NCBI GenBank assembly: GCA_904063045.1
Contig: CAJFCJ010000025.1
Span: forward strand, 124,001-188,000
DNA length: 64,000 bases
Direction of reading: 5' to 3'
Source of the DNA: Dimorphilus gyrociliatus
Lineage: Eukaryota; Animalia; Annelida
Part shown: one piece after another, positions 28,908-40,458 of the stretch
How positions within the stretch are numbered: the first letter of the stretch is position 1
Layout: each line of letters begins with the position of its first letter
The notes under the pieces: generated by a model
The model's input: only the letters and a program-made list of their open reading frames with translations
What the model was told of the DNA's origin: nothing
Databases searched by the model: none
Position numbers and translations under genes: made by a program

Positions 28908-31900
28908 ATGGAAATTAAGAGAAAGAAACCTCTATTTATTTATTCGTTTTGGATATTATTTAATAAAAATGGTAAACATCACCTTAGACAGCCATACCTT
29001 TATACACTACTACAAATCTTTCTACCTATAATCTTAGCATTAATTATTGGATTGTCTAAAGTTTAAATACTACTTTTGCATTGAATTATATATATTTTAA
29101 CCTTTAACCTTTACGTTATGACTAAATATAGCTTATGGATAAAAATTACGGAAGCTTATATCATTTTGAATACAGTGATGAATACAATGTTAATATTGAT
29201 AATAATAATAGCAATGTCGATTGGATAAATGGAAGGATTAGTTATTATTTGATTGATTATAAGTAAGAGTAATTTGATTATCTATTGAAGATTCTTCTTG
29301 TTCTTTACATTTAAAAGGAAAAAAACAATACCAATAGACCTAAGAATTCACTCACTAAGAAATTAATGAATATTTACATTGACGAATTGAATATGACTCA
29401 AGGTTAATATTAATGATAATATAGCTAATTGATTGACAATTAATAAGGATCTGTAAATATATAGATTCCAAAAATATCACAAAGTACGAAAATCATAATT
29501 ATATTACACTATTATTCCATTTTAATGAAAGGTTTAATAAGCCATTGAATATTTCATATACAATTAAGTATATTTACTGATATTAATACAAGAATTTCAA
29601 TTTAAATGTGTACATTTATATATACATTTATACGTAATTGAATTTAGCATAGAAAGCAAAGTTAAAGAACCTTCTAATTGGCTATTTGGTCAGATTTTCA
29701 GTAATAATAAAATTATAGAATTATTAAATTTTCAAGATGACAAAAGTCAATTGAAAAAGGTCTATAAAGAATTCAAGAAACAGTTAATTGAGAAATAATT
29801 TAATTACTTATTCAATAGATGGAAGATAAAGAATACTTTGTCCTTCAACTTCAATCATTCGTTGATAAAGCTATAATAAAGCATGTCTTTAACGGTTCTA
29901 AAGATTCTAGATCTATTGTCTTAAAGCCTATACCAACTTTAATAAGTCAATCAACATCCTTAGAAAATATTAAATATATTCTTCCCATGATTTTTATTAT
30001 AACGGTTCTACCTTTTCTATCTTCTTTTATTCGCTTTCCAAATATGGATAAGAAAGTTTTAAAAAGGTAAAAATAAGCAAACTAACCGTATTTTTACTAG
30101 TAAAAGTGTATAATCTTCTTATAAAATCACAGTTTTAGATCGAATCAGATTGTCTATCCGTATTGGACGTCTTGGTTTGCGTACATGTTTTTCGTGCTGA
30201 TGGTAGTACTTGTTACAGTACTATTGTTTTTCTTTTTGGATTTCGGATACGGTGCAATAATAAGTAAATCTTCTCCAACTATAGTTTTTTGTCTATTGAC
30301 AATTTATGTGTGTGATGTTGTTCTTTTTTGCTCTGTTATGTCTTCGTTAATTACTTCGCCGAATATTGCTGTAGCAGTAGCCGATATACTTTTCATTTTG
30401 TCTGCTCTTCCTTATTTTTACTTAAAGAGAGCATATAGGGGATTTATTTCAACTTATTTACCTTGTCTCTTACTTTTTAACGTTGCTTTATTTGATGGAT
30501 TTTACGATATTCTTAGTTGGGAAGAAAAAGGCGGTTCTTCATGGTCTAATATACATCTAGCAGCTCACTCTAATAGTTTGATATCAGTGAAAATTTGCTT
30601 AATTTGCCTTTCGGCATGGTTTCTTATCTTTCTAGTAGTTGCTTTTATCGTTAAACTACTCTATTCTGTACTTAAAGGAGATATGTCTTCACTAAAGGCT
30701 GTTATAACTCTTCTTAGCTGTCAGCACCATATTAACGAATTGAACAGAAGGTATCATCGGATAAATTTCGCCTTAAACTATTCCCTTATGCTCGTTGTTC
30801 ACTTTTCAATTTATACAACACAGATACGCTTCATTTTTAATGATGGAAACGGTTGATACTAGCGAAGTTAGCTCCGTAACATCAGTTATGGGCGAAAGAA
30901 ATATACCAGAACGCGATGTAATTTATTTTAAAAATGTCTTTAAAGAGAAGTTTTACAACGGTGTACCGTCCGGTTTAATTCTTCATGGGATTAATTTGAA
31001 ATGCTACCGTGGAGAATTAACATCCCTAATCGGTTTAGGAGATAATTCTGGACTCGAAGAAATCTTGGAACTGATCGCTGGCTCCTCGAAACCGTTAGAA
31101 GGAACAATCAGCGTTCTAGGTGTGAGAGCCGATTTACCCCTTTGTAGTTGGAATGTTTTTCATTGCCCTTCGAGAAATATTCTTTTTCAGAGATTGACTG
31201 TAAAAGAAAATATTATAAATTTCGCCAAGTTGAAGGGTATTACTAAAGATTCGATGGAAAAATATATAAAACTGGTGTTTGATACCACGCAATTAATAGA
31301 ATTTCAGCATCATTTATTATGCTTGATACCCTACTCATTACAACGGAGATTATTTATTTGTATGATAATCTATACACCTATTCCAGTTGTTAGCATTACC
31401 TAATATTTTTGTAATTATTATCAATAATCTTTATTTTTTTTCTTGTCAATTAATTAATAAGATACTTTTAGAGGAACCAATGAAAGGGCTAGACTATAAT
31501 GAATCGTTAATAATATGGGAAGTTCTAAAGGAAGCCAAATTTAATAGATCAATAATAATTACCTGTAAAAATTTTGATGAAATTGAAGGAAATGCTGATA
31601 GAGTTATTGTTTTAGAAGCTGGCGTGGTTAGATGTTGCGAAGATGTTTCTGATTTAACTTTTAAAAATGGTATTGGTTATGAAATTACTATTTATGGTAA
31701 CGACGACTTTTCATTAAGAATAGATAAAATAGACGAACTCTTTAGTAAAAACTATCCTGATGCAATCATTGTCAATAAGAAGTAATTGATAACATTTAAT
31801 AAGTTTTCACTTTTAAATTATATAGATACTTGTAAAAATAAATAGCTATCTTGAACATCGTATAGTCGTTCCAAACTTAAATGGTCTAGAGATGGCGAAT

Positions 31901-34900
31901 ATTTGTAAAACCTTGGAAAAAACTCCTGAATATAATATAAAATCTTTTGACATATCGTTCAAAGGTATTGAAGAAGTTATTAAAGAGCGTAAAGAATCTT
32001 TAAGTGAATATAGGGGTTCATTGTCCTTAGAGCGTTTCCAATTGAACAACAATTTTCAAAGTATTTTTATAGCGTTATAATTTTTTTAATACGAAATTAA
32101 ATATTCTATTAAATATGTCTAAATATACATTTTATTGAAGTCAGTTTATTGTTCATATTTACTCTGATAGGCGAAGAAAAATATCAGAAGAGTTTTCGAG
32201 TTATTAAAGGATTTATTCTTAAAGAATGGATAGAACTAAAACGTCATTTTTTATATTACCTGTTTTTGTTAATAACCTGTTATATACTATTACTGGCTCC
32301 TATTTTCGAAACTGACTTTATCAAAGAAAAAAACTTTAATGCGACTATTGATAAAACAATTAAATCTTTAAAATCAAATAGGATATTGATTGTACCTACC
32401 TACTTAAACAATAACTCTGTAATTCATCAATCTTCATTAGCGTTTGAACAATTTCAAAGTAAAAAGTTAAAAAAAGAAATAAGGAAAACGTTTCAAAAAG
32501 AACGCTTACCTACTTATTCATATGCATTTGTTTTTACAGAAAATACGCAAAATGGTATTAAAACTATATTATTTTCTTTACAAAACTTAAATTTACCTCT
32601 TATTTTTCTAACCTTTAAGGTTATTATAATACCTATCAACCTTACGCTTCCTCAGTTTGCCTTAATATTATAAATGAAGGCTATTTAAAGAATTTTTGCC
32701 CTAATTGTAGTCTAAGTACATTTATTTCGGAGGAAAAGCTTCTGCGGACGAACTACTATTACTTATCCTTTTCAATAACATTTGTTCTCTCATTTGGAAT
32801 TGTAATGATTACTACACGAGTTGTTAGTCAAAATCAAAAATCAATTAAACATATCCAGGTTGCTTTTTATGTTGATATTAATATATTGCATAATTAATAC
32901 TTTTGTTGTAGGTACTATCCTGTAGAAATCCAATTTTGTATTGGTTAAGTAATTTTATTAAGGACTTTGCTTACATTGCATTATTGAGTATTATTACAAC
33001 ATTTACATTGGCTTTTTCAAAAACCTTAGATGGAGATACATCAAAAACTTCGATCATATGGTCAAAATTAATAATTATTATGCTTACCTTTAGTTGCGCA
33101 GCTATTTTACATAGTTATGCTTGGAGTTTCACATTTAAAAAGTCATTAATCTATGCCTCTTTCTATTTCATAAGAATAATGTCTAATTTCTTGCTGTGCG
33201 CAATTGGGACGGCTTTATTAAAACCTGAAAAATATGATTCAATCAATCAACTATTTTTGTTATTAAGTCTTGAATTTTCATGCATATCTGCAATTATGGT
33301 AAACATAAATAGATAAAATATATATAAAACATGTAAGCAACACAAACTATGTTCTTTTTAGGAGTTATTCAATGAACAACAAATGCATTCACAAAATATG
33401 AATAAATTTGGTATTGGATATATTTTCTTATGGATTTCAATAATTATATCTATATCTTTAATATGTATATTTGAATTTTATGGTTCAAAAATTATAAGAA
33501 GATTTGTGAGATATTCGTATAAAATACCAATAAATACATCAAACAATATAAATAAAAATACGAATAAACATGAGAAAGAGTTATTAATTATAAATAATGT
33601 ATCTAAAATTTTTTATCCATCTACAAAGAAAATTCTAAATTGTATTAATATCAAAATAAAAAAGGGAGATTGCATTGGAATATTATGTAAACCTGGTGCT
33701 GGTGTGACAACACTTTTCAGAATGTTGACTGGTAAATACTGTATTACTCATGGTGACATTACTTTAGGTAATTTTAAAACTACTATTTATTCATGATTAG
33801 TACTCGTAATAAGATTTTATAATGTTAAATTAGGAAATTATAATATTACAAATGAAATTATCAAAGCTAGAGAATTAATTGGGTACTGTCCTCAAGGAAA
33901 CTGCCTATTTTCCTTTTTAACCGTTGAAGAGCATTTAACTATGTATTATACTTTAAGAGGTTTGTGCCACGACCATACGGTTACTGAAGTTAAGGGTATA
34001 CTTCACGGGCTTGGATTAGAGTTATTAAAAAAAGAAAGAATTGGCTATTTAAATGAGGAGGATAAAAGAAAAATATCCGTTGCTATATCAGTCATCGGAA
34101 AGCCAGCTCTCTTATTATTAGATGATCCATTTCAAAACATGTCCAATTTAAGTAAAAGAAAGGTTATGGAGTATCTTCGAGCACTTAGAAAATCTGGGAT
34201 GGCCATTCTTATGTCGACAAAAAGGTGAGTTTTCTAACATTATTTCTAATCAGTTTAGTAAAAATGACACGGATTTCTTTCGAAATCTTACAATAAAAGC
34301 TTTGAAGAGTATGAATTTTTATGTACAAAACTAGCAATACTAGTAAATGGTTCTTTCAAGATTATCGACTCAACTGAAGATGCTAAAAAAATGTTTGGGA
34401 AAGGATATCATATTGAGATTGATATGGCTAATAATGAGAATTTATCATCTCCCCCCTTAGACGTTAGAACCCACAGTCTTTTGACAGAGTTAAGGACAAT
34501 ATATCCACATTGTGTCTCTAGAGAGATAGGCAAAGGTTATATTCATTATCATATTGGAAATGATCCAATAAAATCCAAGCTTTTTTTAAATATGGATTCT
34601 TTTACGAAGCAATTTCATATTCATAAATATAAAATCTATAAATCCTCTTTTAAGAAAATCCTCCGAGGTTTGTTTTTACAAATTACTAGGTCTAATATAA
34701 AATTGTACTGTATAATAATATTCTACAAAAATAATGTCTTAGGTATAACTAAGGCTCAGCAGCATTACAAGACTTCTAAACCTAAAATATTTAATCTCAT
34801 AAAACATGTATTGAGTTATATTTTAAGCATTTATAAAAAAGAGACTAACTTTGATAATACATACCAATCATCTCCATATAATATCTCTTTTATAAAAGAC

Positions 34901-35074
34901 ACTAATTCTACATCAAGTGAATCAAATGGCGAAGAATTCTCCGAAGGGGAAAATTCTCAGAACTATAGCTCTACTAATCTCTATACGTTAAAAGATACTA
35001 TAACCTTTAATCATTCAGTAGACCCTTCTAATTATTACGAAACTACTCTACCTTTTCTCACTCATGATGTTTGA
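28908..35074 (+). CDS. Highly divergent ABCA-subfamily full transporter (TMD-NBD-TMD-NBD) with degenerate ATPase motifs, many exons
   Basis: N-terminal LFNKNGKHHLRQPYLYTLLQIFLPIIL resembles the ABCA LLWKN...ELLxP start. Both NBD scaffolds are recognisable (FQRLTVKENI, ILLEEPMKGLD; GYCPQ, LTVEEHL, KRKISVA, LLLDDP). Second-half LLKEWIELKR and YWLSNFIKD, and C-terminal FGKGY. Introns checked (30751-30823 and the one before 31462) are in frame. Confidence 0.85.
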
Positions 35075-35334
35075 AAGGAAAACAAAAACAACAATAAAAA
35101 AGGAATGTTTAGTTTTTTAAAATAGTAAAAAAAAACGTTCTATTCTTTTTTTGGATAGAGTATCATGTGATTCATAAATGGAATGTATCCTTTTGTAAAC
35201 TTTTTATAAATACCAACATATTTTAAGCTTTTTCTTCTTATTATTATGATTTGACAATAAATTACCAAAGTAATGTTGTTTGATTTTAGTGTCAAAAGGT
35301 GTAGAGTTCGATTGTATGACATTCGAACATATGA

Positions 35335-35347
35335 AGCGCCATCTAGC
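35335..35347. promoter_or_regulatory. CTCF-like motif AGCGCCATCTAGC between ABCA and R3HDM4
   Basis: Identical to 15243-15255. Confidence 0.4.
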
Positions 35348-35701
35348 GTTTGCGTAATATGTCTAGGTGTAGGATGTAGTATTTTTAAGTTTTTTATTTT
35401 TTTAACGTTATACACGGAATACTATTCGATTGTAGAATTTCCAATATGTATCGTATATTGTATTATGCTAAATAAATACTGATACAAAGTAGTTTATATG
35501 TCTTATTCTAAGTAGATTACCAAAATGAAATTGTATTTATTATTTTTGGCGCTAGAGGAAGTGACGTTAATCCTTGACCGAGGTATTTCATCAGTGCTGT
35601 GCAAGTGATTCTCTTTAGAATTCCTGAACGCCAATCGCTTATTTTAAACAATAACTCTTCGTTTTTATCTCTGAGAGTAGAACTATCAATCTTGGCTGAA
35701 A

Positions 35702-37957
35702 ATGGGTACTACAGTTAATGAAACTAAAGACACAAATACAGAGATGAAAAGTAAACCAGATGACATCTTGTAAGTAGGTCGAATTATTTAAAATGTAATT
35801 TTATCCCATTTTACTGTTACTTTTCTCCGAAATTTTACGACACAAGCTCCTCTTTTGAATAATAAACAATAAATCCAAGCGTATTTGGGAATACAACTAT
35901 CGTTTTAGCATTTATGGTATATTGCAACCTGATTTTGCAATATCTTAACATTAGAATCGTAAACAAACAAATTCATATGTGTATTTAACTAATTAACAAA
36001 TTCGTTTATAAAATAGTGTTATGGAGGATAATGAAGTAAATTCTACTGAAATTGATGCTACACAAATCAAAAAAAAGTCAAAAGGGAAAAGGTATGTCCC
36101 ACAACGCCATCTTGAGCCATCAAGAAGACAGAAAGCTGGCGTTCGAAAAATGAGAAGAAATGAAAATAGTATGTTAAAAACAAAATAATAATACTTTAAA
36201 GCAAGTTCAATAGATATCATTTTCCCTTTTCACCTTTCCTAGCTAACTTTTTGCTTAATGGGGGTAGCAATGGCGAATTAGATTCAGACATAGATGTTAT
36301 GGACAACTTGATTGAGCCAGGCACATCACCATTGGACTGCCTAATGCTGGACAAAGATAAAATGCAGGTTACGATAAATGTCCTAAATAGTTACGAAAGA
36401 GATTTATTAAGTAGCTTTAGAAGACACCTAGTAAATACAAGTTACGTAACGAGATAGCTTTAGGATGATAATGAACAAGTGCTAAAGTTCCCAAAAAAAG
36501 AAGAATTAGAGATAATGTTTTTTCTTCTTAGAGTACTAAAACTATTTTATAAAATCAAGGATACGCGGCCTATACAAAGTATTCATTTTTCTATTGAATT
36601 CCATATACAGTATAGACAAATATGTGTAAAAATAGAAACATAAAGTTCACGCCTTTTTCAAACCAGGCAACTGTTCAACTATTGAATATGATACATTATT
36701 TTGCCCCTACAATAGGTAAATCATGAAAATATACTAGGATAAAAATGATTTGGTTAGATGTTGTTTCAAATAAATTTCATTAAAGCTTATTAAATTTCAA
36801 CATTTTTTTCTCACAGAAATATTAAAAAATTTGCAGTGTAGGCTTATTTACAGAAGTGCACCTCTGAAGAAAATTTTAGTATATCTTCAAGTGCTTCTTG
36901 TACATTAAACTCTTAGCCACGTCTGCAATTGGGGTCGGGAAGATGTGGATTCTTTAAAAAAAAAACTCTTCGAGTCTTGTTTTAAAACATGATTTTACAG
37001 GCATGGAACGATTTTATTAATTGTTCAGAGGAGGATCAACAACAATTCCTTGAAGAGAATTTTGAAAAGAGTTCAGACGACGCTGATTGGGAGTTTGTTG
37101 AATCTGAAGCCGATCAAAGAGAAGGTTATATATTTTAAAAGATAATTGAAAAATCTGTCCAACTCTCATATTATTTGTTATCAGTTCATCCTGCTTATAC
37201 TTCGGAAGAATGTTTTAATAGAATTGATAAGAGATTGAAAAATTTTTTGAGACGTCGTCATGTACCGCTCGGAAGATTGGATTATTTGGAGCGATACATA
37301 ATAGACTACTTTAAAATTTGTCCTATATCCGTTCTCGTTATGCAACTAGATAACGGATTCGAGAGAATGTTGTGCCACGCTTTGTGCCAGTATCACCTCC
37401 TACACTGCTACAGTAAGTTACTTGTAAACTTGCTTGTCTTGAAGGTAGATTTATGTAGTACTTGAACATAATCAGTGCGACATATGTAGACATAATATCT
37501 ACACTAGGCAAAAAAGTATTGATTAAATCTAAATTCCGATAAACAGTGTTTATCAAAAAAGGTCTAGAGTGAACAGCCTATGAAATTTTAAATTTAGATC
37601 TTGAAAGCATAGTCCTACTGAAAAGACCAGGACACTGACACTATTAAATTTCCAAATTTTGACCTTGATTTTGAAGAGAACCTGAATTGTTCTTGTTGTT
37701 CATAAAATTCTGTAAATAGACAATTGAGTGATGACACGTTGCAAACAATTGTACTTTTAATGAAATTTGAACGTATAAGTCATAATGGCAAATTTCCACT
37801 CCTTCTGTCTTATCAAATGATAAATATTCTTATTGTTTATTTTTTTTACACAGGTATGGATGATGATCGGGGTTGCAGAAATACGCATGTTGAAAACAAA
37901 CGAGAAAAGTTTATTGGAGCTCCGAGTTCTCTTTATGAATTTATTGTGTCAGCATAG
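35702..37957 (+). CDS. R3HDM4: R3H domain-containing protein 4, multi-exon
   Basis: GVRKMRRNEN, AWNDFINCSEEDQQQFL, HPAYTSEECFNRIDKRLK, and R3H-like DNGFERMLCHALCQY. Confidence 0.85.
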
Positions 37958-38515
37958 AAGACAAGAAAGAAAATAATATTGTTGAAGATGTTGTGAGCTT
38001 ATTGTCTTATTTTTCTGTTGTTTATTACTCATTTAATTAGGATTTTTCGTCTAGTTAGATTAATTTATATAATTATATTTATTGCTGAATTAAAAAGCAA
38101 ACAGGTTAAGCAATTAATTAATTATATTTTCTAACTGATGAATATATTAAAAATAAACAAATAGAAGAAATATTGAAATATATATAATAAAACTCATAAC
38201 TCATAGAACGCTCTACGCATAGCACGTAAACGGTAGCATTAAAAAACAAATAATTATTTTTTATGTAAAGTTTCAAGCCCAATAACTTTTTATTGTCCAA
38301 GCAAGTCCAAACACTCGAGCATTTGAGAGCTTATATTGAAAATTTTTTGAGAAATCCTATCTCTTCAAGATACTTTCTCTTTTAATGCAATATCAATTAT
38401 TTTCAGCTTGGTGATAACAAGCCAATTGTGATCCGTTACTTTCGCATCCCTATAATTTTTATGTATTATATTAGTTTTAATGATTATAATTTGAGAAAAA
38501 AAAACTTTTATTCAA

Positions 38516-40458
38516 TTAGCCTACCTGTTCGCTAAATTTGGTCCTCTGTCCGTATTTACTCCAAAACGTTACTTTTACTTTGTTTTGTCTTCCGCTTCTC
38601 TGGTCAAAAGTTTTGCACATTTCAAAAGCTGGAATGTACAAATGTAATGAAACACATGTATCGGAGTGAGATGGATTTTCCATTCGATGTAGGCCCATAG
38701 AATCTGAATTGGGAGATAATAAAATATATCAAGTATTACATAAGAAGGATAAAAAACACACAGACATACAGGCACAAAAAAACGTAATTAATGGTATTTC
38801 TATAAATACTATTATCAATAGGTTCTGATTGAATTATTGATGGTTCCAGTTTCCAGCCACCCTCTTAAACAACAACAAGTACTAACCATTTATGTAAGTA
38901 ACACCATCTTTTTCATAAGTAACAGAGCTTCTTTCAACCATTGGTTCACCTTCCTTCTCTGGCCAATTGTACATGGTTTCTTTTAAACATCCATCCAATA
39001 TTTTAACAAAACAGTGTGCATCACTATTGTAAGGGAAACGAAAAAGGCAAAATAGTTATTCATCTTTTTTTTTAAAAAAAAAATATATATATATATTTTA
39101 TAGTATTCAGTCAAAAGACCTAAATTATAACTCTTCTTCTTGAACATAAAAAAATATTAAGAGAGATAGATTGATAAAGAAGATATTGTTTATCAGTCAA
39201 AGTTAATTGAAGTTTTGTTTTTTCACTTTATCCATTATATGAGATTGCTAACCTTAGTTTTTTTTATTCGATATTTTCAAGATCAAAACGTGACGTGAGA
39301 GTTTTACTAGGCCTATATACCTTTCGTGTGCATAATATTCACAAGTCATAATTGTTATAGAATTTCGTTGTTGTTCGTGAATGCTCATTAATCTAGGAAA
39401 ATTGTATATAATATATATACTATATACTATACAATACTGTATGTATAAAAACCTCTATGGTAAAAATCAATAGAATGATTTATAAATGACAGATTGTGTT
39501 TATCTAACATATAAAAATGTAACTATTTATATGCATATATGTACATATTTAAACAATCTATCAATTCTACAATATCCTTATCTAATAAGGTTTTTTAGAA
39601 CTTTATATATATATATTTGTGGTACACACAGTCGTATAATCAACGAAAATCTTATCGATGTAATAAAAATATCAGAACATTTTAATAATATTTAATAGTT
39701 TTTTTTCGAATACTTTTGGTCAATAAGTAACACATTTTGATTACAAAAAAATGGACTTCTTGAAAAATATTGATCTACTTTTTTTTTAATAAAAACAAAA
39801 TGTTCTAAAAAGATAATTTTAAACTATTTTCATATACTTATTACTGTCTATGAGAATAATATTTGGCTCAGGCTCAATCAAGCAGCACCTTATTTCTTTA
39901 TACTTTTTACAATAGGAATAAAAATAGTACTAAATATATTTTATAAAGACGCATAGTACAACAATGTTGCAATAGATCCGCTTTAACCAAAGTAACATAA
40001 GTCGGTCAACAAATAGTAGACCTAGAGAAAGTGAAACAATAATCTATGACTGTTCAACCTACCTATGATCGTGAATGGACGAACCATGACCTTCTCCCCA
40101 GCATAGGGCAATTAGGTTAAATTTTCCATTACCTCCATCAATAAGATTTCTTGTATATCTTTTAAATAGAATTAAAAAACAATGAGTTATTGATCAGTTA
40201 GGGACAAATTTTTTAATCGAAGGTCAAAAATTCGGTAATTTCGTACCTGTGTTGATCAAACTTTGCGTATTTTTTCCAATCTTTAGGATTACTTTTATAT
40301 GATGCAAGAACAGCTTTGACATATTCGACATTCACAGTGTCTTCAGCAAAAACGTCGTAAAGTTTACGAATCATGTCGTCCAAAGTCGTGATTTCACCAA
40401 TTTCCTTTTCATCCCAGTATTTACTATCATAGTTATTAAAAGTTAAAACATTCTCCAT
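38516..40458 (-). CDS. CDO1: Cysteine dioxygenase type 1, 4 exons (a further 3' exon after CAG|gtaggc is possible)
   Basis: [14 protein letters not shown] (Arg60), [14 protein letters not shown] (His86/88), AHCF (Cys93), GLHRMEN (His140), SLHLY (Ser153/His155/Tyr157), TFWSKYG. Confidence 0.95.

What the first reader, a model, noticed from the sequence alone, without database searches (positions are those of the whole stretch)
28908..35074. ABCA transporter with both ATPase domains catalytically degenerate (pseudo-ATPase)
Seen in NBD1: Walker A GLGDNSGLE (31032-31058, no GKT Lys), Q-loop CPSRN (Q to S), signature IPYSL in place of LSGGM, Walker B LLEEP (D to E), H-loop ITCKN (no His). Seen in NBD2: Walker A CKPGAGVTT (33686-33712, Lys to Val), signature LNEED, Walker B LDDP (catalytic Glu to Asp), H-loop MSTK. 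Even so, the full four-domain layout is retained over about 6 kb and the introns checked are in frame. Established: asymmetric ABC exporters lose one site, but transport needs at least one competent site. Inference: a maintained non-hydrolysing ABCA acting as a lipid sensor, channel, scaffold or regulator, or else a young unprocessed pseudogene.
Basis: partly seen in the sequence, partly recalled or inferred. Interest (0 to 1): 0.75.

Follow-up and report, generated by a model that had tools for sequence, protein, structure and literature searches.

The report
Conserved ABCA transporter lacking working ATPase sites
The small marine worm Dimorphilus gyrociliatus and a related species keep an intact lipid-pump-type (ABCA) gene whose two ATP-burning sites have both lost their key residues, so the protein probably does something other than ATP-driven pumping; no RNA or biochemical evidence could be obtained.

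Summary
Every motif string is at the stated coordinates, and HMMER alignments to ABCA4/ABCA1/ABCA3 put them at the Walker A, Q-loop, signature, Walker B and H-loop positions of NBD1 and NBD2.

The locus yields a 16-exon, all GT-AG model of 1,662 aa with no internal stop. Exons 1-5 are provisional.

The pseudogene alternative is rejected. A syntenic orthologue from an unnamed relative (Logan SRR23372228) keeps exons 6-16 open, with the same intron positions and the same dead motifs. Over 1,393 codons dN is 0.21 and dS about 1.8 (saturated), so omega is about 0.12 (TMD1 0.05, NBD1 0.06). The dead motif windows are more conserved (84%) than the rest of the NBDs (70%).

The gene is single-copy. 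Its nearest paralogues are 27-29% identical, and HMMER found no other close relative among 1.84 billion representative proteins. It sits on a very long stem among the ABCA1/3/13-type sequences; exact placement is unresolved.

Weaker degenerate ABCAs exist in Lingula, a springtail, a mite and a spider, probably independently.

Loss of hydrolysis is inferred from motifs only. Site 1 looks unable to bind ATP; site 2 might still bind it.

The scan earlier noted a similar double-dead ABCC gene elsewhere in this genome (s1-081070, not checked here).

The parts
28908..29060 (+). Exon 1: start ATG, N-terminus and TM1
   Evidence: model. Weak Pfam ABC2_membrane hit (E 0.0097). TM at residues 31-49. Provisional: no orthologue coverage.
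29132..29759 (+). Exons 2-4 (29132-29262, 29448-29567, 29648-29759): short, Asn/Ile/Lys-rich extracellular domain 1
   Evidence: Only frame and GT-AG logic support them. GC is barely above that of the introns. These are the least certain exons.
29819..30066 (+). Exon 5: end of ECD1 and TM2
   Evidence: TM at residues 225-243. The resemblance of its start to an ABCA ECD1-end motif is my reading from memory; no alignment covering this exon was inspected here.
30133..30750 (+). Exon 6: TM3-TM6 of TMD1 with the re-entrant external helices
   Evidence: 86% identical to the orthologue, omega 0.05. 27-28% identity to TMD1 of other ABCAs in this genome, E 4e-12.
30824..31388 (+). Exon 7: NBD1 first part, holding dead Walker A (31032-31058), Q-loop (31164-31178) and signature (31326-31352). 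The donor may instead lie at 31385/31386.
   Evidence: The orthologue P0001 is 75% identical with the same motifs.
31462..31781 (+). Exon 8: NBD1 Walker B ILLEEP (31462-31479), D-loop, H-loop ITCKN (31558-31572), start of R1 domain (GIGYEI)
31846..32060 (+). Exon 9: R1 domain and linker
   Evidence: The intron 8 junction matches the public model DgyrCDS13386.
32171..32858 (+). Exons 10-11 (32171-32554, 32620-32858): TM7, short ECD2, TM8
   Evidence: The phase-1 intron is conserved in the orthologue.
32912..33298 (+). Exon 12: TM9-TM11 and external helices of TMD2
33362..33767 (+). Exon 13: TM12 and NBD2 start with Walker A CKPGAGVTT (33686-33712; Lys replaced by Val)
   Evidence: The orthologue has CKPGTGVTT.
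33834..34224 (+). Exon 14: NBD2 Q-loop CPQ (intact), signature LNEEDKRKI (34049-34075), Walker B LLLLDDP (34109-34129), H-loop MSTK (34211-34222)
   Evidence: Junctions are identical to DgyrCDS13387.
34300..34667 (+). Exon 15: end of NBD2 and R2 domain (GKGYHIEI)
   Evidence: (R2 omega 0.08).
34743..35074 (+). Exon 16: lineage-specific C-terminal extension (first ~50 residues conserved) and TGA stop

Best explanation
This is a real, single-copy, selectively maintained gene of Dimorphilus gyrociliatus. It encodes a 1,662-aa ABCA-type protein (TMD1-NBD1-R1-TMD2-NBD2-R2) that descends from an ABCA1/3/13-type lipid transporter. It has lost the residues needed for canonical ATP hydrolysis in both composite sites.

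Site 1 (NBD1 Walker A/B, Q-loop and H-loop plus the NBD2 signature):
- Walker A has no Lys or Thr and no glycine-rich pattern.
- The Q-loop Gln and the H-loop His are gone.
- The opposing signature SGG has become NEE.
- This site is most likely unable even to bind ATP.

Site 2 (NBD2 Walker A/B plus the NBD1 signature):
- It keeps a GAG-x-TT loop, the Walker B Asp, the Q-loop Gln and an A-loop aromatic residue.
- It lacks the Walker A Lys (Val), the catalytic Glu (Asp), the H-loop His (Lys) and the partner signature (PYS).
- It is predicted to be hydrolysis-dead but could still bind nucleotide weakly.

Inferred mechanism: the protein works without ATP turnover. The strongly conserved membrane domains would serve as the functional core, for lipid binding, passive lipid movement or sensing. 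The two NBDs would be kept as a structural or regulatory clamp, because their former ATP-site surfaces are still under selection.

Shown here: gene integrity, conservation, motif states. Inferred: loss of hydrolysis and the ATP-independent role.
For: - Motif states at canonical columns.
- Intact 16-exon GT-AG model.
- Syntenic orthologue L001 with the same 10 intron positions and phases, and exons 6-16 open.
- Selection: dN 0.207, dS 1.77, omega about 0.12 over 1,393 codons; TMD1 0.05, NBD1 0.064, NBD2 0.139.
- Exon identity 72% against intron identity 54% with many gaps; differences by codon position 0.23/0.14/0.48; all exon length differences are multiples of three.
- Neighbouring genes show a similar dS.
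- Dead-motif windows are 84% identical against 70% for the rest of the NBDs, Fisher p 0.002.
- Single copy, with paralogues at 27-29% identity.
- Canonical ABC domains elsewhere in the genome score 108-134 bits on Pfam ABC_tran, against 19-27 bits here.
- One canonical ABCA paralogue, inspected at C6, has all motifs.
- Public models DgyrCDS13386 and DgyrCDS13387 use the same junctions for introns 8, 13, 14 and 15.
- Established ABC enzymology (my knowledge): the Walker A Lys, the catalytic Glu after Walker B, the H-loop His and the signature Ser-Gly-Gly are each needed for normal hydrolysis.
Against: - No RNA or protein evidence was obtainable.
- The public annotation splits the locus into fragments rather than one gene.
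- Exons 1-5 have no orthologue support and little compositional contrast with their introns.
- Loss of hydrolysis is inferred from sequence only.
- In other ABC proteins, Walker A Lys mutants can often still bind ATP (my knowledge), so site 2 may act as a nucleotide sensor.
- dS is saturated, so omega is approximate.
- Only two species are available.
Confidence: 0.68

Rival explanations
1. A young, unprocessed pseudogene: a decaying ABCA copy whose open frames are residual.
For: Both NBDs have lost their catalytic motifs. The public annotation has no full-length model. No RNA contig was found.
Against: An orthologue at saturated synonymous divergence keeps 1,393 codons open with omega about 0.12. 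Intron positions are conserved and exon indels are only multiples of three. The motif windows are more conserved than their surroundings. The motif changes are shared by both species, so they are old, not recent.
Confidence: 0.03
2. Still a nucleotide-dependent ABC protein. Site 2 would bind, and perhaps slowly hydrolyse, ATP using non-canonical residues: the Lys at position 2 of CKPGAGVTT, Asp as the base, and Lys in place of the H-loop His. The protein would then be an extreme asymmetric ABCA or an ATP-gated sensor, not a true pseudo-ATPase.
For: NBD2 keeps the GAG-x-TT backbone of the P-loop, the Walker B Asp, the Q-loop Gln and an aromatic residue at the A-loop position. These elements are conserved in the orthologue. 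Strong constraint on the site windows fits continued ligand binding.
Against: Four catalytic elements of site 2 are missing together: the Walker A Lys, the catalytic Glu, the H-loop His and the partner signature. To my knowledge, no ABC protein is known to hydrolyse ATP with all four missing. I also did not find one in the paper searches.
Confidence: 0.15
3. A member of an old clade of catalytically dead ABCAs in lophotrochozoans or protostomes, shared with Lingula XP_013413257 and perhaps others, rather than a dinophilid-specific innovation.
For: The LG+G4 tree groups it with the degenerate ABCAs of Lingula, Orchesella and Dinothrombium (SH-aLRT 95). A C20-PMSF tree with named references pairs it with Lingula (SH-aLRT 94). 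It shares with Lingula the NBD1 signature pattern P-x-S-L-[QK]-R-R-L and the DD Walker B of NBD2.
Against: A second C20-PMSF tree does not recover the grouping. Long branches meet in these trees, with a stem of 3.0-3.5 changes per site. An AU test does not reject placing the pair with canonical ABCA3 proteins instead (p 0.33). A word search with the Lingula protein found nothing closer than 30% identity.
Confidence: 0.2

Closest known systems
ABCA3 / ABCA1 / ABCA4 (canonical ABCA lipid transporters; solved structures 7w01, 7tbw, 7lkz)
   Same: One-polypeptide TMD-NBD-TMD-NBD layout. Extracellular domains after TM1 and TM7. A GxGY-type R domain after each NBD. Best PDB hits for both NBD pieces. 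Length (1,662 aa) and short ECDs resemble ABCA3 (my knowledge of ABCA3's size).
   Different: Both ATP sites lack the Walker A Lys, the signature SGG and the H-loop His. NBD2 also lacks the catalytic Glu, and NBD1 lacks the Walker B Asp and the Q-loop Gln. Only 27-29% identical to any other ABCA. Pfam TMD and R-domain models do not detect it. It has a conserved extra C-terminal segment.
Asymmetric ABC proteins with one degenerate site (CFTR, SUR1/2, TAP1/2, ABCG5/G8, Pdr5/Cdr1, TmrAB; e.g. PMC7544095, PMC7205462)
   Same: Loss of the catalytic Glu, H-loop His or signature in a composite site. In CFTR and SUR, the ABC fold has been re-used for a non-pumping role.
   Different: Those proteins keep one fully competent site, and their degenerate site still binds ATP through an intact Walker A. 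Here neither site is competent, and neither Walker A has its Lys.
Unstudied degenerate ABCA paralogues of other invertebrates found here: Lingula anatina XP_013413257.1, Orchesella dallaii CAL8137103.1, Dinothrombium tinctorium RWS12061.1, Argiope bruennichi KAF8766507.1, and a Logan protein (P0016)
   Same: ABCA-type full transporters (the ABCA3-like grouping) with signature, H-loop and/or catalytic-Glu losses in both NBDs.
   Different: Most keep at least one Walker A Lys, and several keep DE in Walker B. The D. gyrociliatus gene is the most extreme. Common ancestry is not supported robustly. None has been characterised, as far as the paper searches show.
ABCC4-type double-dead gene of the same genome (earlier scan note s1-081070)
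   Same: An intact ABC full transporter of D. gyrociliatus, reported with both ATP sites dismantled and its frame kept in a second species.
   Different: A different subfamily (ABCC) on a different contig.

Membership tests
ABC subfamily A (ABCA), by descent | Single polypeptide with TMD1-NBD1-TMD2-NBD2 | tested here: met
   16-exon model. NBD pieces align to ABCA4 residues 947-1074 and 1933-1999. Hydropathy shows a 6+6 pattern, with TM9 below threshold.
ABC subfamily A (ABCA), by descent | ABCA-type membrane domain homologous to other ABCA TMDs | tested here: met
   Exon 6 hits TMD1 of six other ABCA loci in the same genome at 23-28% identity, E down to 4e-12. No Pfam membrane-domain model reached E 0.1 on this exon.
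ABC subfamily A (ABCA), by descent | Extracellular domains between TM1-TM2 and TM7-TM8 | tested here: met
   About 175 aa and about 130 aa between the predicted helices. Both are short, and ECD1 rests on provisional exons.
ABC subfamily A (ABCA), by descent | R domain with a GxGY motif after each NBD | tested here: met
   GIGYEI and GKGYHI align with GTGYHL of canonical ABCAs. Pfam models do not detect the domains.
ABC ATPase (functional class) | Walker A GxxGxGK[ST] in at least one NBD | tested here: not met
   GLGDNSGLE and CKPGAGVTT: there is no Lys at the conserved position in either NBD. The same holds in the orthologue.
ABC ATPase (functional class) | Signature LSGGQ, catalytic Glu after Walker B, and H-loop His forming at least one competent composite site | tested here: not met
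   Signatures are IPYSL and LNEED. Walker B is LLEEP and LLDDP. The H-loop positions hold Lys and Lys. Actual ATPase activity cannot be tested with these tools.
Asymmetric ABC transporter with one degenerate site | One consensus, hydrolysis-competent site retained | tested here: not met
   Both composite sites lack three or more catalytic elements.
Pseudogene | Stops or frameshifts, or neutral evolution (omega near 1) | tested here: not met
   There is no stop in the 1,662 codons. Omega is about 0.12 against the orthologue, and exon indels are multiples of three only.
Expressed gene | Spliced transcripts | not testable with these tools
   No RNA-derived protein or contig could be retrieved. 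Records of this genome appear to be withheld from the contig look-up.

The most novel reading that the evidence does not exclude
The ABC ATP sites have been re-purposed rather than merely lost. Relative to the consensus, site 1 has lost its Lys and gained six acidic side chains (Asp, Glu, Glu in Walker A; Glu, Glu, Asp in the opposing signature), next to Walker B LLEEP. It could therefore be a divalent-cation site or a built-in phosphate-mimicking contact that controls NBD dimerisation without ATP. Site 2 may remain a non-hydrolytic nucleotide sensor. The protein would then be an ATP-turnover-independent ABCA, acting as a gated lipid conduit, scramblase or sensor. It may be the extreme member of a recurrent, unrecognised class of pseudo-ABCAs in protostomes.
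Probability: 0.15. Interest if true: 0.8.

Novelty: new variant of a known kind. Interest (0 to 1): 0.6.

Why it matters
ABC transporters are textbook ATP-driven machines. The known exceptions (CFTR, SUR, heterodimers with one degenerate site) all keep one working site. This is a full-length ABCA under clear purifying selection that has no working site, and its dead motifs are conserved better than their surroundings. It would be a natural experiment on what the ABCA fold can do without ATP turnover, whether passive lipid handling, sensing or scaffolding. It also offers a natural counterpart to the engineered hydrolysis-deficient mutants used in structural work. Milder cases in a brachiopod, a springtail, a mite and a spider, plus a reported ABCC case in the same worm, suggest that pseudo-ATPase ABC proteins are under-recognised because automatic annotation names them as ordinary transporters.

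Tried and rejected
- **RNA evidence.** Exon-wise word searches returned only the orthologue fragment and two public fragment models. Exact-product look-ups found nothing. Expression is therefore open.
- **Common origin with other degenerate ABCAs.** This was suggested by an LG+G4 tree. It was not recovered with the C20 mixture model and is not required by an AU test. I treat it as likely long-branch attraction.
- **Relatives of the Lingula protein.** A word search found nothing closer than 30% identity.
- **Pfam on the TMD and R-domain exons.** No hits; homology had to be shown through paralogues.
- **A first script that located exon junctions by typed strings.** I redid it with coordinates only.
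- **MAFFT --auto on 51 full-length proteins.** It timed out, so faster settings were used.
- **Crude neighbour-gene dN/dS.** Only two of five blocks gave clean frames.
- **The 353-nt 'intron' (31118-31470) in DgyrCDS13386.** I reject it as constitutive. The skipped stretch is conserved as coding sequence, and its acceptor AG is absent in the orthologue.
- **Structure prediction.** Not run.


Full report
**Source and identity.** The window is G000:C25:124001-188000 of a 77.9-Mb, roughly 30% GC eukaryotic assembly. Earlier scan notes named the organism Dimorphilus gyrociliatus. I checked this. Two public proteins, DgyrCDS13386 (P0002) and DgyrCDS13387 (P0227), are letter-for-letter translations of exons of this locus. 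It is not human DNA.

**The observation.** ORF pieces of 28908-35074 hit the ABCA4, ABCA1, ABCA3 and ABCA7 structures. The NBD1 piece scores E 2e-12, aligned to ABCA4 947-1074. The NBD2 piece scores E 7.5e-11, aligned to ABCA4 1933-1999. Pfam ABC_tran scores are only 19-27 bits, around or below the 25-bit cut-off. Other ABC domains of the genome score 108-134 bits.

I aligned the NBDs with canonical ABCAs, including an intronless paralogue of the same genome (L002 1471-6330).
- NBD1: Walker A GLGDNSGLE (consensus G-x-N-G-A-G-K-T-T), Q-loop CPS (CPQ), signature IPYSL (LSGGM/Q), Walker B LLEEP (ILDEP), H-loop T-C-K-N (S-T-H).
- NBD2: Walker A CKPGAGVTT, Q-loop CPQ intact, signature LNEED (YSGGN), Walker B LLDDP (LLDEP), D-loop QNMS (SGMD), H-loop S-T-K (T-S-H).

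**Gene model.** I built the model from coordinates only: 16 exons, all with GT-AG borders, 4,989 nt, 1,662 aa and no internal stop. Introns are 53-185 nt long. That leaves no room for hidden alternative exons carrying canonical motifs.
- Hydropathy gives TM1, five further helices, NBD1, TM7, about five further helices, then NBD2.
- Exons 1-5 rest only on frame and splice logic. Their GC (0.25) barely exceeds that of their introns (0.22). Over the whole gene the figures are 0.30 for exons and 0.21 for introns. I mark exons 1-5 as provisional.
- The joined model was used only inside local scripts, for translation, alignment, dN/dS and trees. It was not sent to any database search or structure predictor. 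All searches were made exon by exon, by reference.

**Public annotation.** The locus is split. DgyrCDS13386 starts at an internal Met, removes 31118-31470 (Q-loop and signature) as an intron, and ends by reading into intron 9. DgyrCDS13387 starts at the Met at 33722. Both agree with my junctions for introns 8, 13, 14 and 15. The annotation pipeline combined AUGUSTUS, exonerate, PASA and EVM. These fragments therefore do not prove transcription.

**Orthologue and selection.** The exon 7 query found P0001, at 75% identity, on a 10-kb Logan contig (SRR23372228, L001). An identical protein is also seen in SRR31984834.
- L001 is colinear with window 30131-39101, including the downstream genes.
- Exons align and introns do not. 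Exon identity is 72%; intron identity is 54%, with 146 gap columns.
- Exons 6-16 are open in L001 and have the same ten intron positions and phases.
- Exon lengths differ only by 3, 27, 3 and 12 nt.
- Over 1,393 codons, amino-acid identity is 68%, dN 0.207 and dS 1.77 (NG86; the ML estimate is higher, so dS is saturated). Omega is about 0.12.
- Differences by codon position are 0.23, 0.14 and 0.48.
- By region, omega is 0.05 for TMD1, 0.064 for NBD1, 0.139 for NBD2 and 0.08 for R2.
- Clean exons of neighbouring genes give dS of about 0.8-1.9 and omega of 0.02-0.05. The divergence level is therefore genome-wide for this species pair.
- The orthologue carries the same dead motifs: GLGDNSGLE, CPSRN, LPYALQRRL, LLEEP, ITSKN; CKPGTGVTT, LNEEDKRKV, LLLLDDP, MSTK.
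- The ten motif windows are 84% identical, against 70% for the rest of the NBDs (Fisher p 0.002).

The pseudogene reading is therefore rejected. The former ATP-site surfaces are still constrained.

**Relatives.**
- In its own genome the gene is single-copy. The nearest paralogues, six other ABCA loci, are 23-30% identical.
- HMMER with exon 7 against 1.84 billion representative proteins found only P0001 below 1e-30. The next hit scored 93 bits at 28% identity.
- Among the top 150 hits, a few ABCAs have degenerate motifs in both NBDs: Lingula anatina XP_013413257.1, Orchesella dallaii CAL8137103.1, Dinothrombium tinctorium RWS12061.1, Argiope bruennichi KAF8766507.1 and a Logan protein. Most of them keep at least one Walker A Lys.
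- An LG+G4 tree grouped the worm gene with three of these.
- A C20-PMSF tree did not. It placed the pair on a stem of 3.05 changes per site, inside a group that contains ABCA3-named proteins (SH-aLRT 99 against six unnamed rows used as outgroup).
- A tree with named references paired it with Lingula (SH-aLRT 94, stem 3.5). That tree placed it outside ABCA5, in a polytomy with the ABCA1/13 and ABCA3 groups.
- An AU test does not reject moving the pair to the canonical ABCA3 group (p 0.33).

I conclude that the gene derives from the ABCA1/3/13 radiation. Its length and short ECDs are ABCA3-like. It evolved very fast and then became constrained. Whether it shares its degeneration with Lingula is open.

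**How it most likely works.** The following rests on established ABC enzymology (my knowledge). The Walker A Lys and Ser/Thr hold the beta- and gamma-phosphates and Mg2+. The Glu after Walker B is the catalytic base. The H-loop His and the partner signature stabilise the transition state.
- Site 1 lacks all of these. It has also gained six acidic residues across Walker A and the opposing signature, so it probably cannot bind ATP.
- Site 2 keeps the P-loop backbone (GAG-x-TT), the Walker B Asp, the Q-loop Gln and an A-loop aromatic residue. It lacks the Lys, the Glu, the His and the signature. Hydrolysis is very unlikely; weak binding cannot be excluded.
- The most conserved parts are TMD1, including the re-entrant helices and the TM6-to-NBD1 connector, and NBD1.

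My best reading is an ATP-turnover-independent membrane protein. Its ABCA membrane domains would bind, pass or sense lipid, and its NBDs would act as a fixed or ligand-regulated clamp. This mechanism is inference, and nothing here tests it.

**Literature.** Full-text searches found papers on single degenerate sites (for example PMC7544095 and PMC7205462). They found none describing an ABC full transporter with both sites dead, and none on D. gyrociliatus ABC genes. An earlier scan note (s1-081070) reports an ABCC4-type gene of this genome with both sites dismantled. I did not check it.

**Verdict.** I rate the gene a new variant of a known kind. The main gaps are expression, the 5' exons and any biochemical test.

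Noticed in passing
window 30838-32086 and 33722-35074: The public annotation splits this single ABCA locus into fragment models, DgyrCDS13386 (273 aa) and DgyrCDS13387 (378 aa). DgyrCDS13386 removes 31118-31470 as an intron, deleting the NBD1 Q-loop and signature, and ends inside intron 9.
   Followed up: partly
window 34668-34742: Intron 15 is 75 nt long, in frame and free of stops in D. gyrociliatus. Retaining it would insert 25 residues without breaking the frame. The orthologue's intron (78 nt) has a stop.
   Followed up: partly
window 34743-34900: A C-terminal extension beyond the R2 domain is about 80% identical between the two species over its first ~50 residues and includes a hydrophobic helix-like stretch. 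I recall nothing similar in canonical ABCAs. Its function is unknown.
   Followed up: no
L002 1471-6330 (G000:C6:775970-780829): A canonical ABCA paralogue with all motifs intact is encoded by one uninterrupted 1,619-aa ORF, while the ABCA gene studied here has 15 introns. It is possibly a retrogene.
   Followed up: no
G000:C7:1116536-1124660 and G000:C1:2200337-2206716: Pairs of ABC domains about 6 kb apart give identical Pfam scores. They look like recent tandem duplicates of ABC transporter genes.
   Followed up: no
P0149, P0041, P0067, P0141, P0016: ABCA proteins of Lingula anatina, Orchesella dallaii, Dinothrombium tinctorium, Argiope bruennichi and an unnamed Logan sample have degenerate signature, H-loop or Walker motifs in both NBDs. 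Those that carry a specific name are annotated as ordinary ABCA1- or ABCA2-like transporters.
   Followed up: partly
window introns 6-15 compared with L001: Seven of the ten intron length differences between the two species are multiples of three. About a third would be expected by chance. AT-rich triplet repeats may explain it; it remains unexplained.
   Followed up: no
window 35545-39101 and L001 5458-9506: The downstream genes are syntenic in the relative. One short exon (36069-36171) is 97% identical at the protein level.
   Followed up: partly
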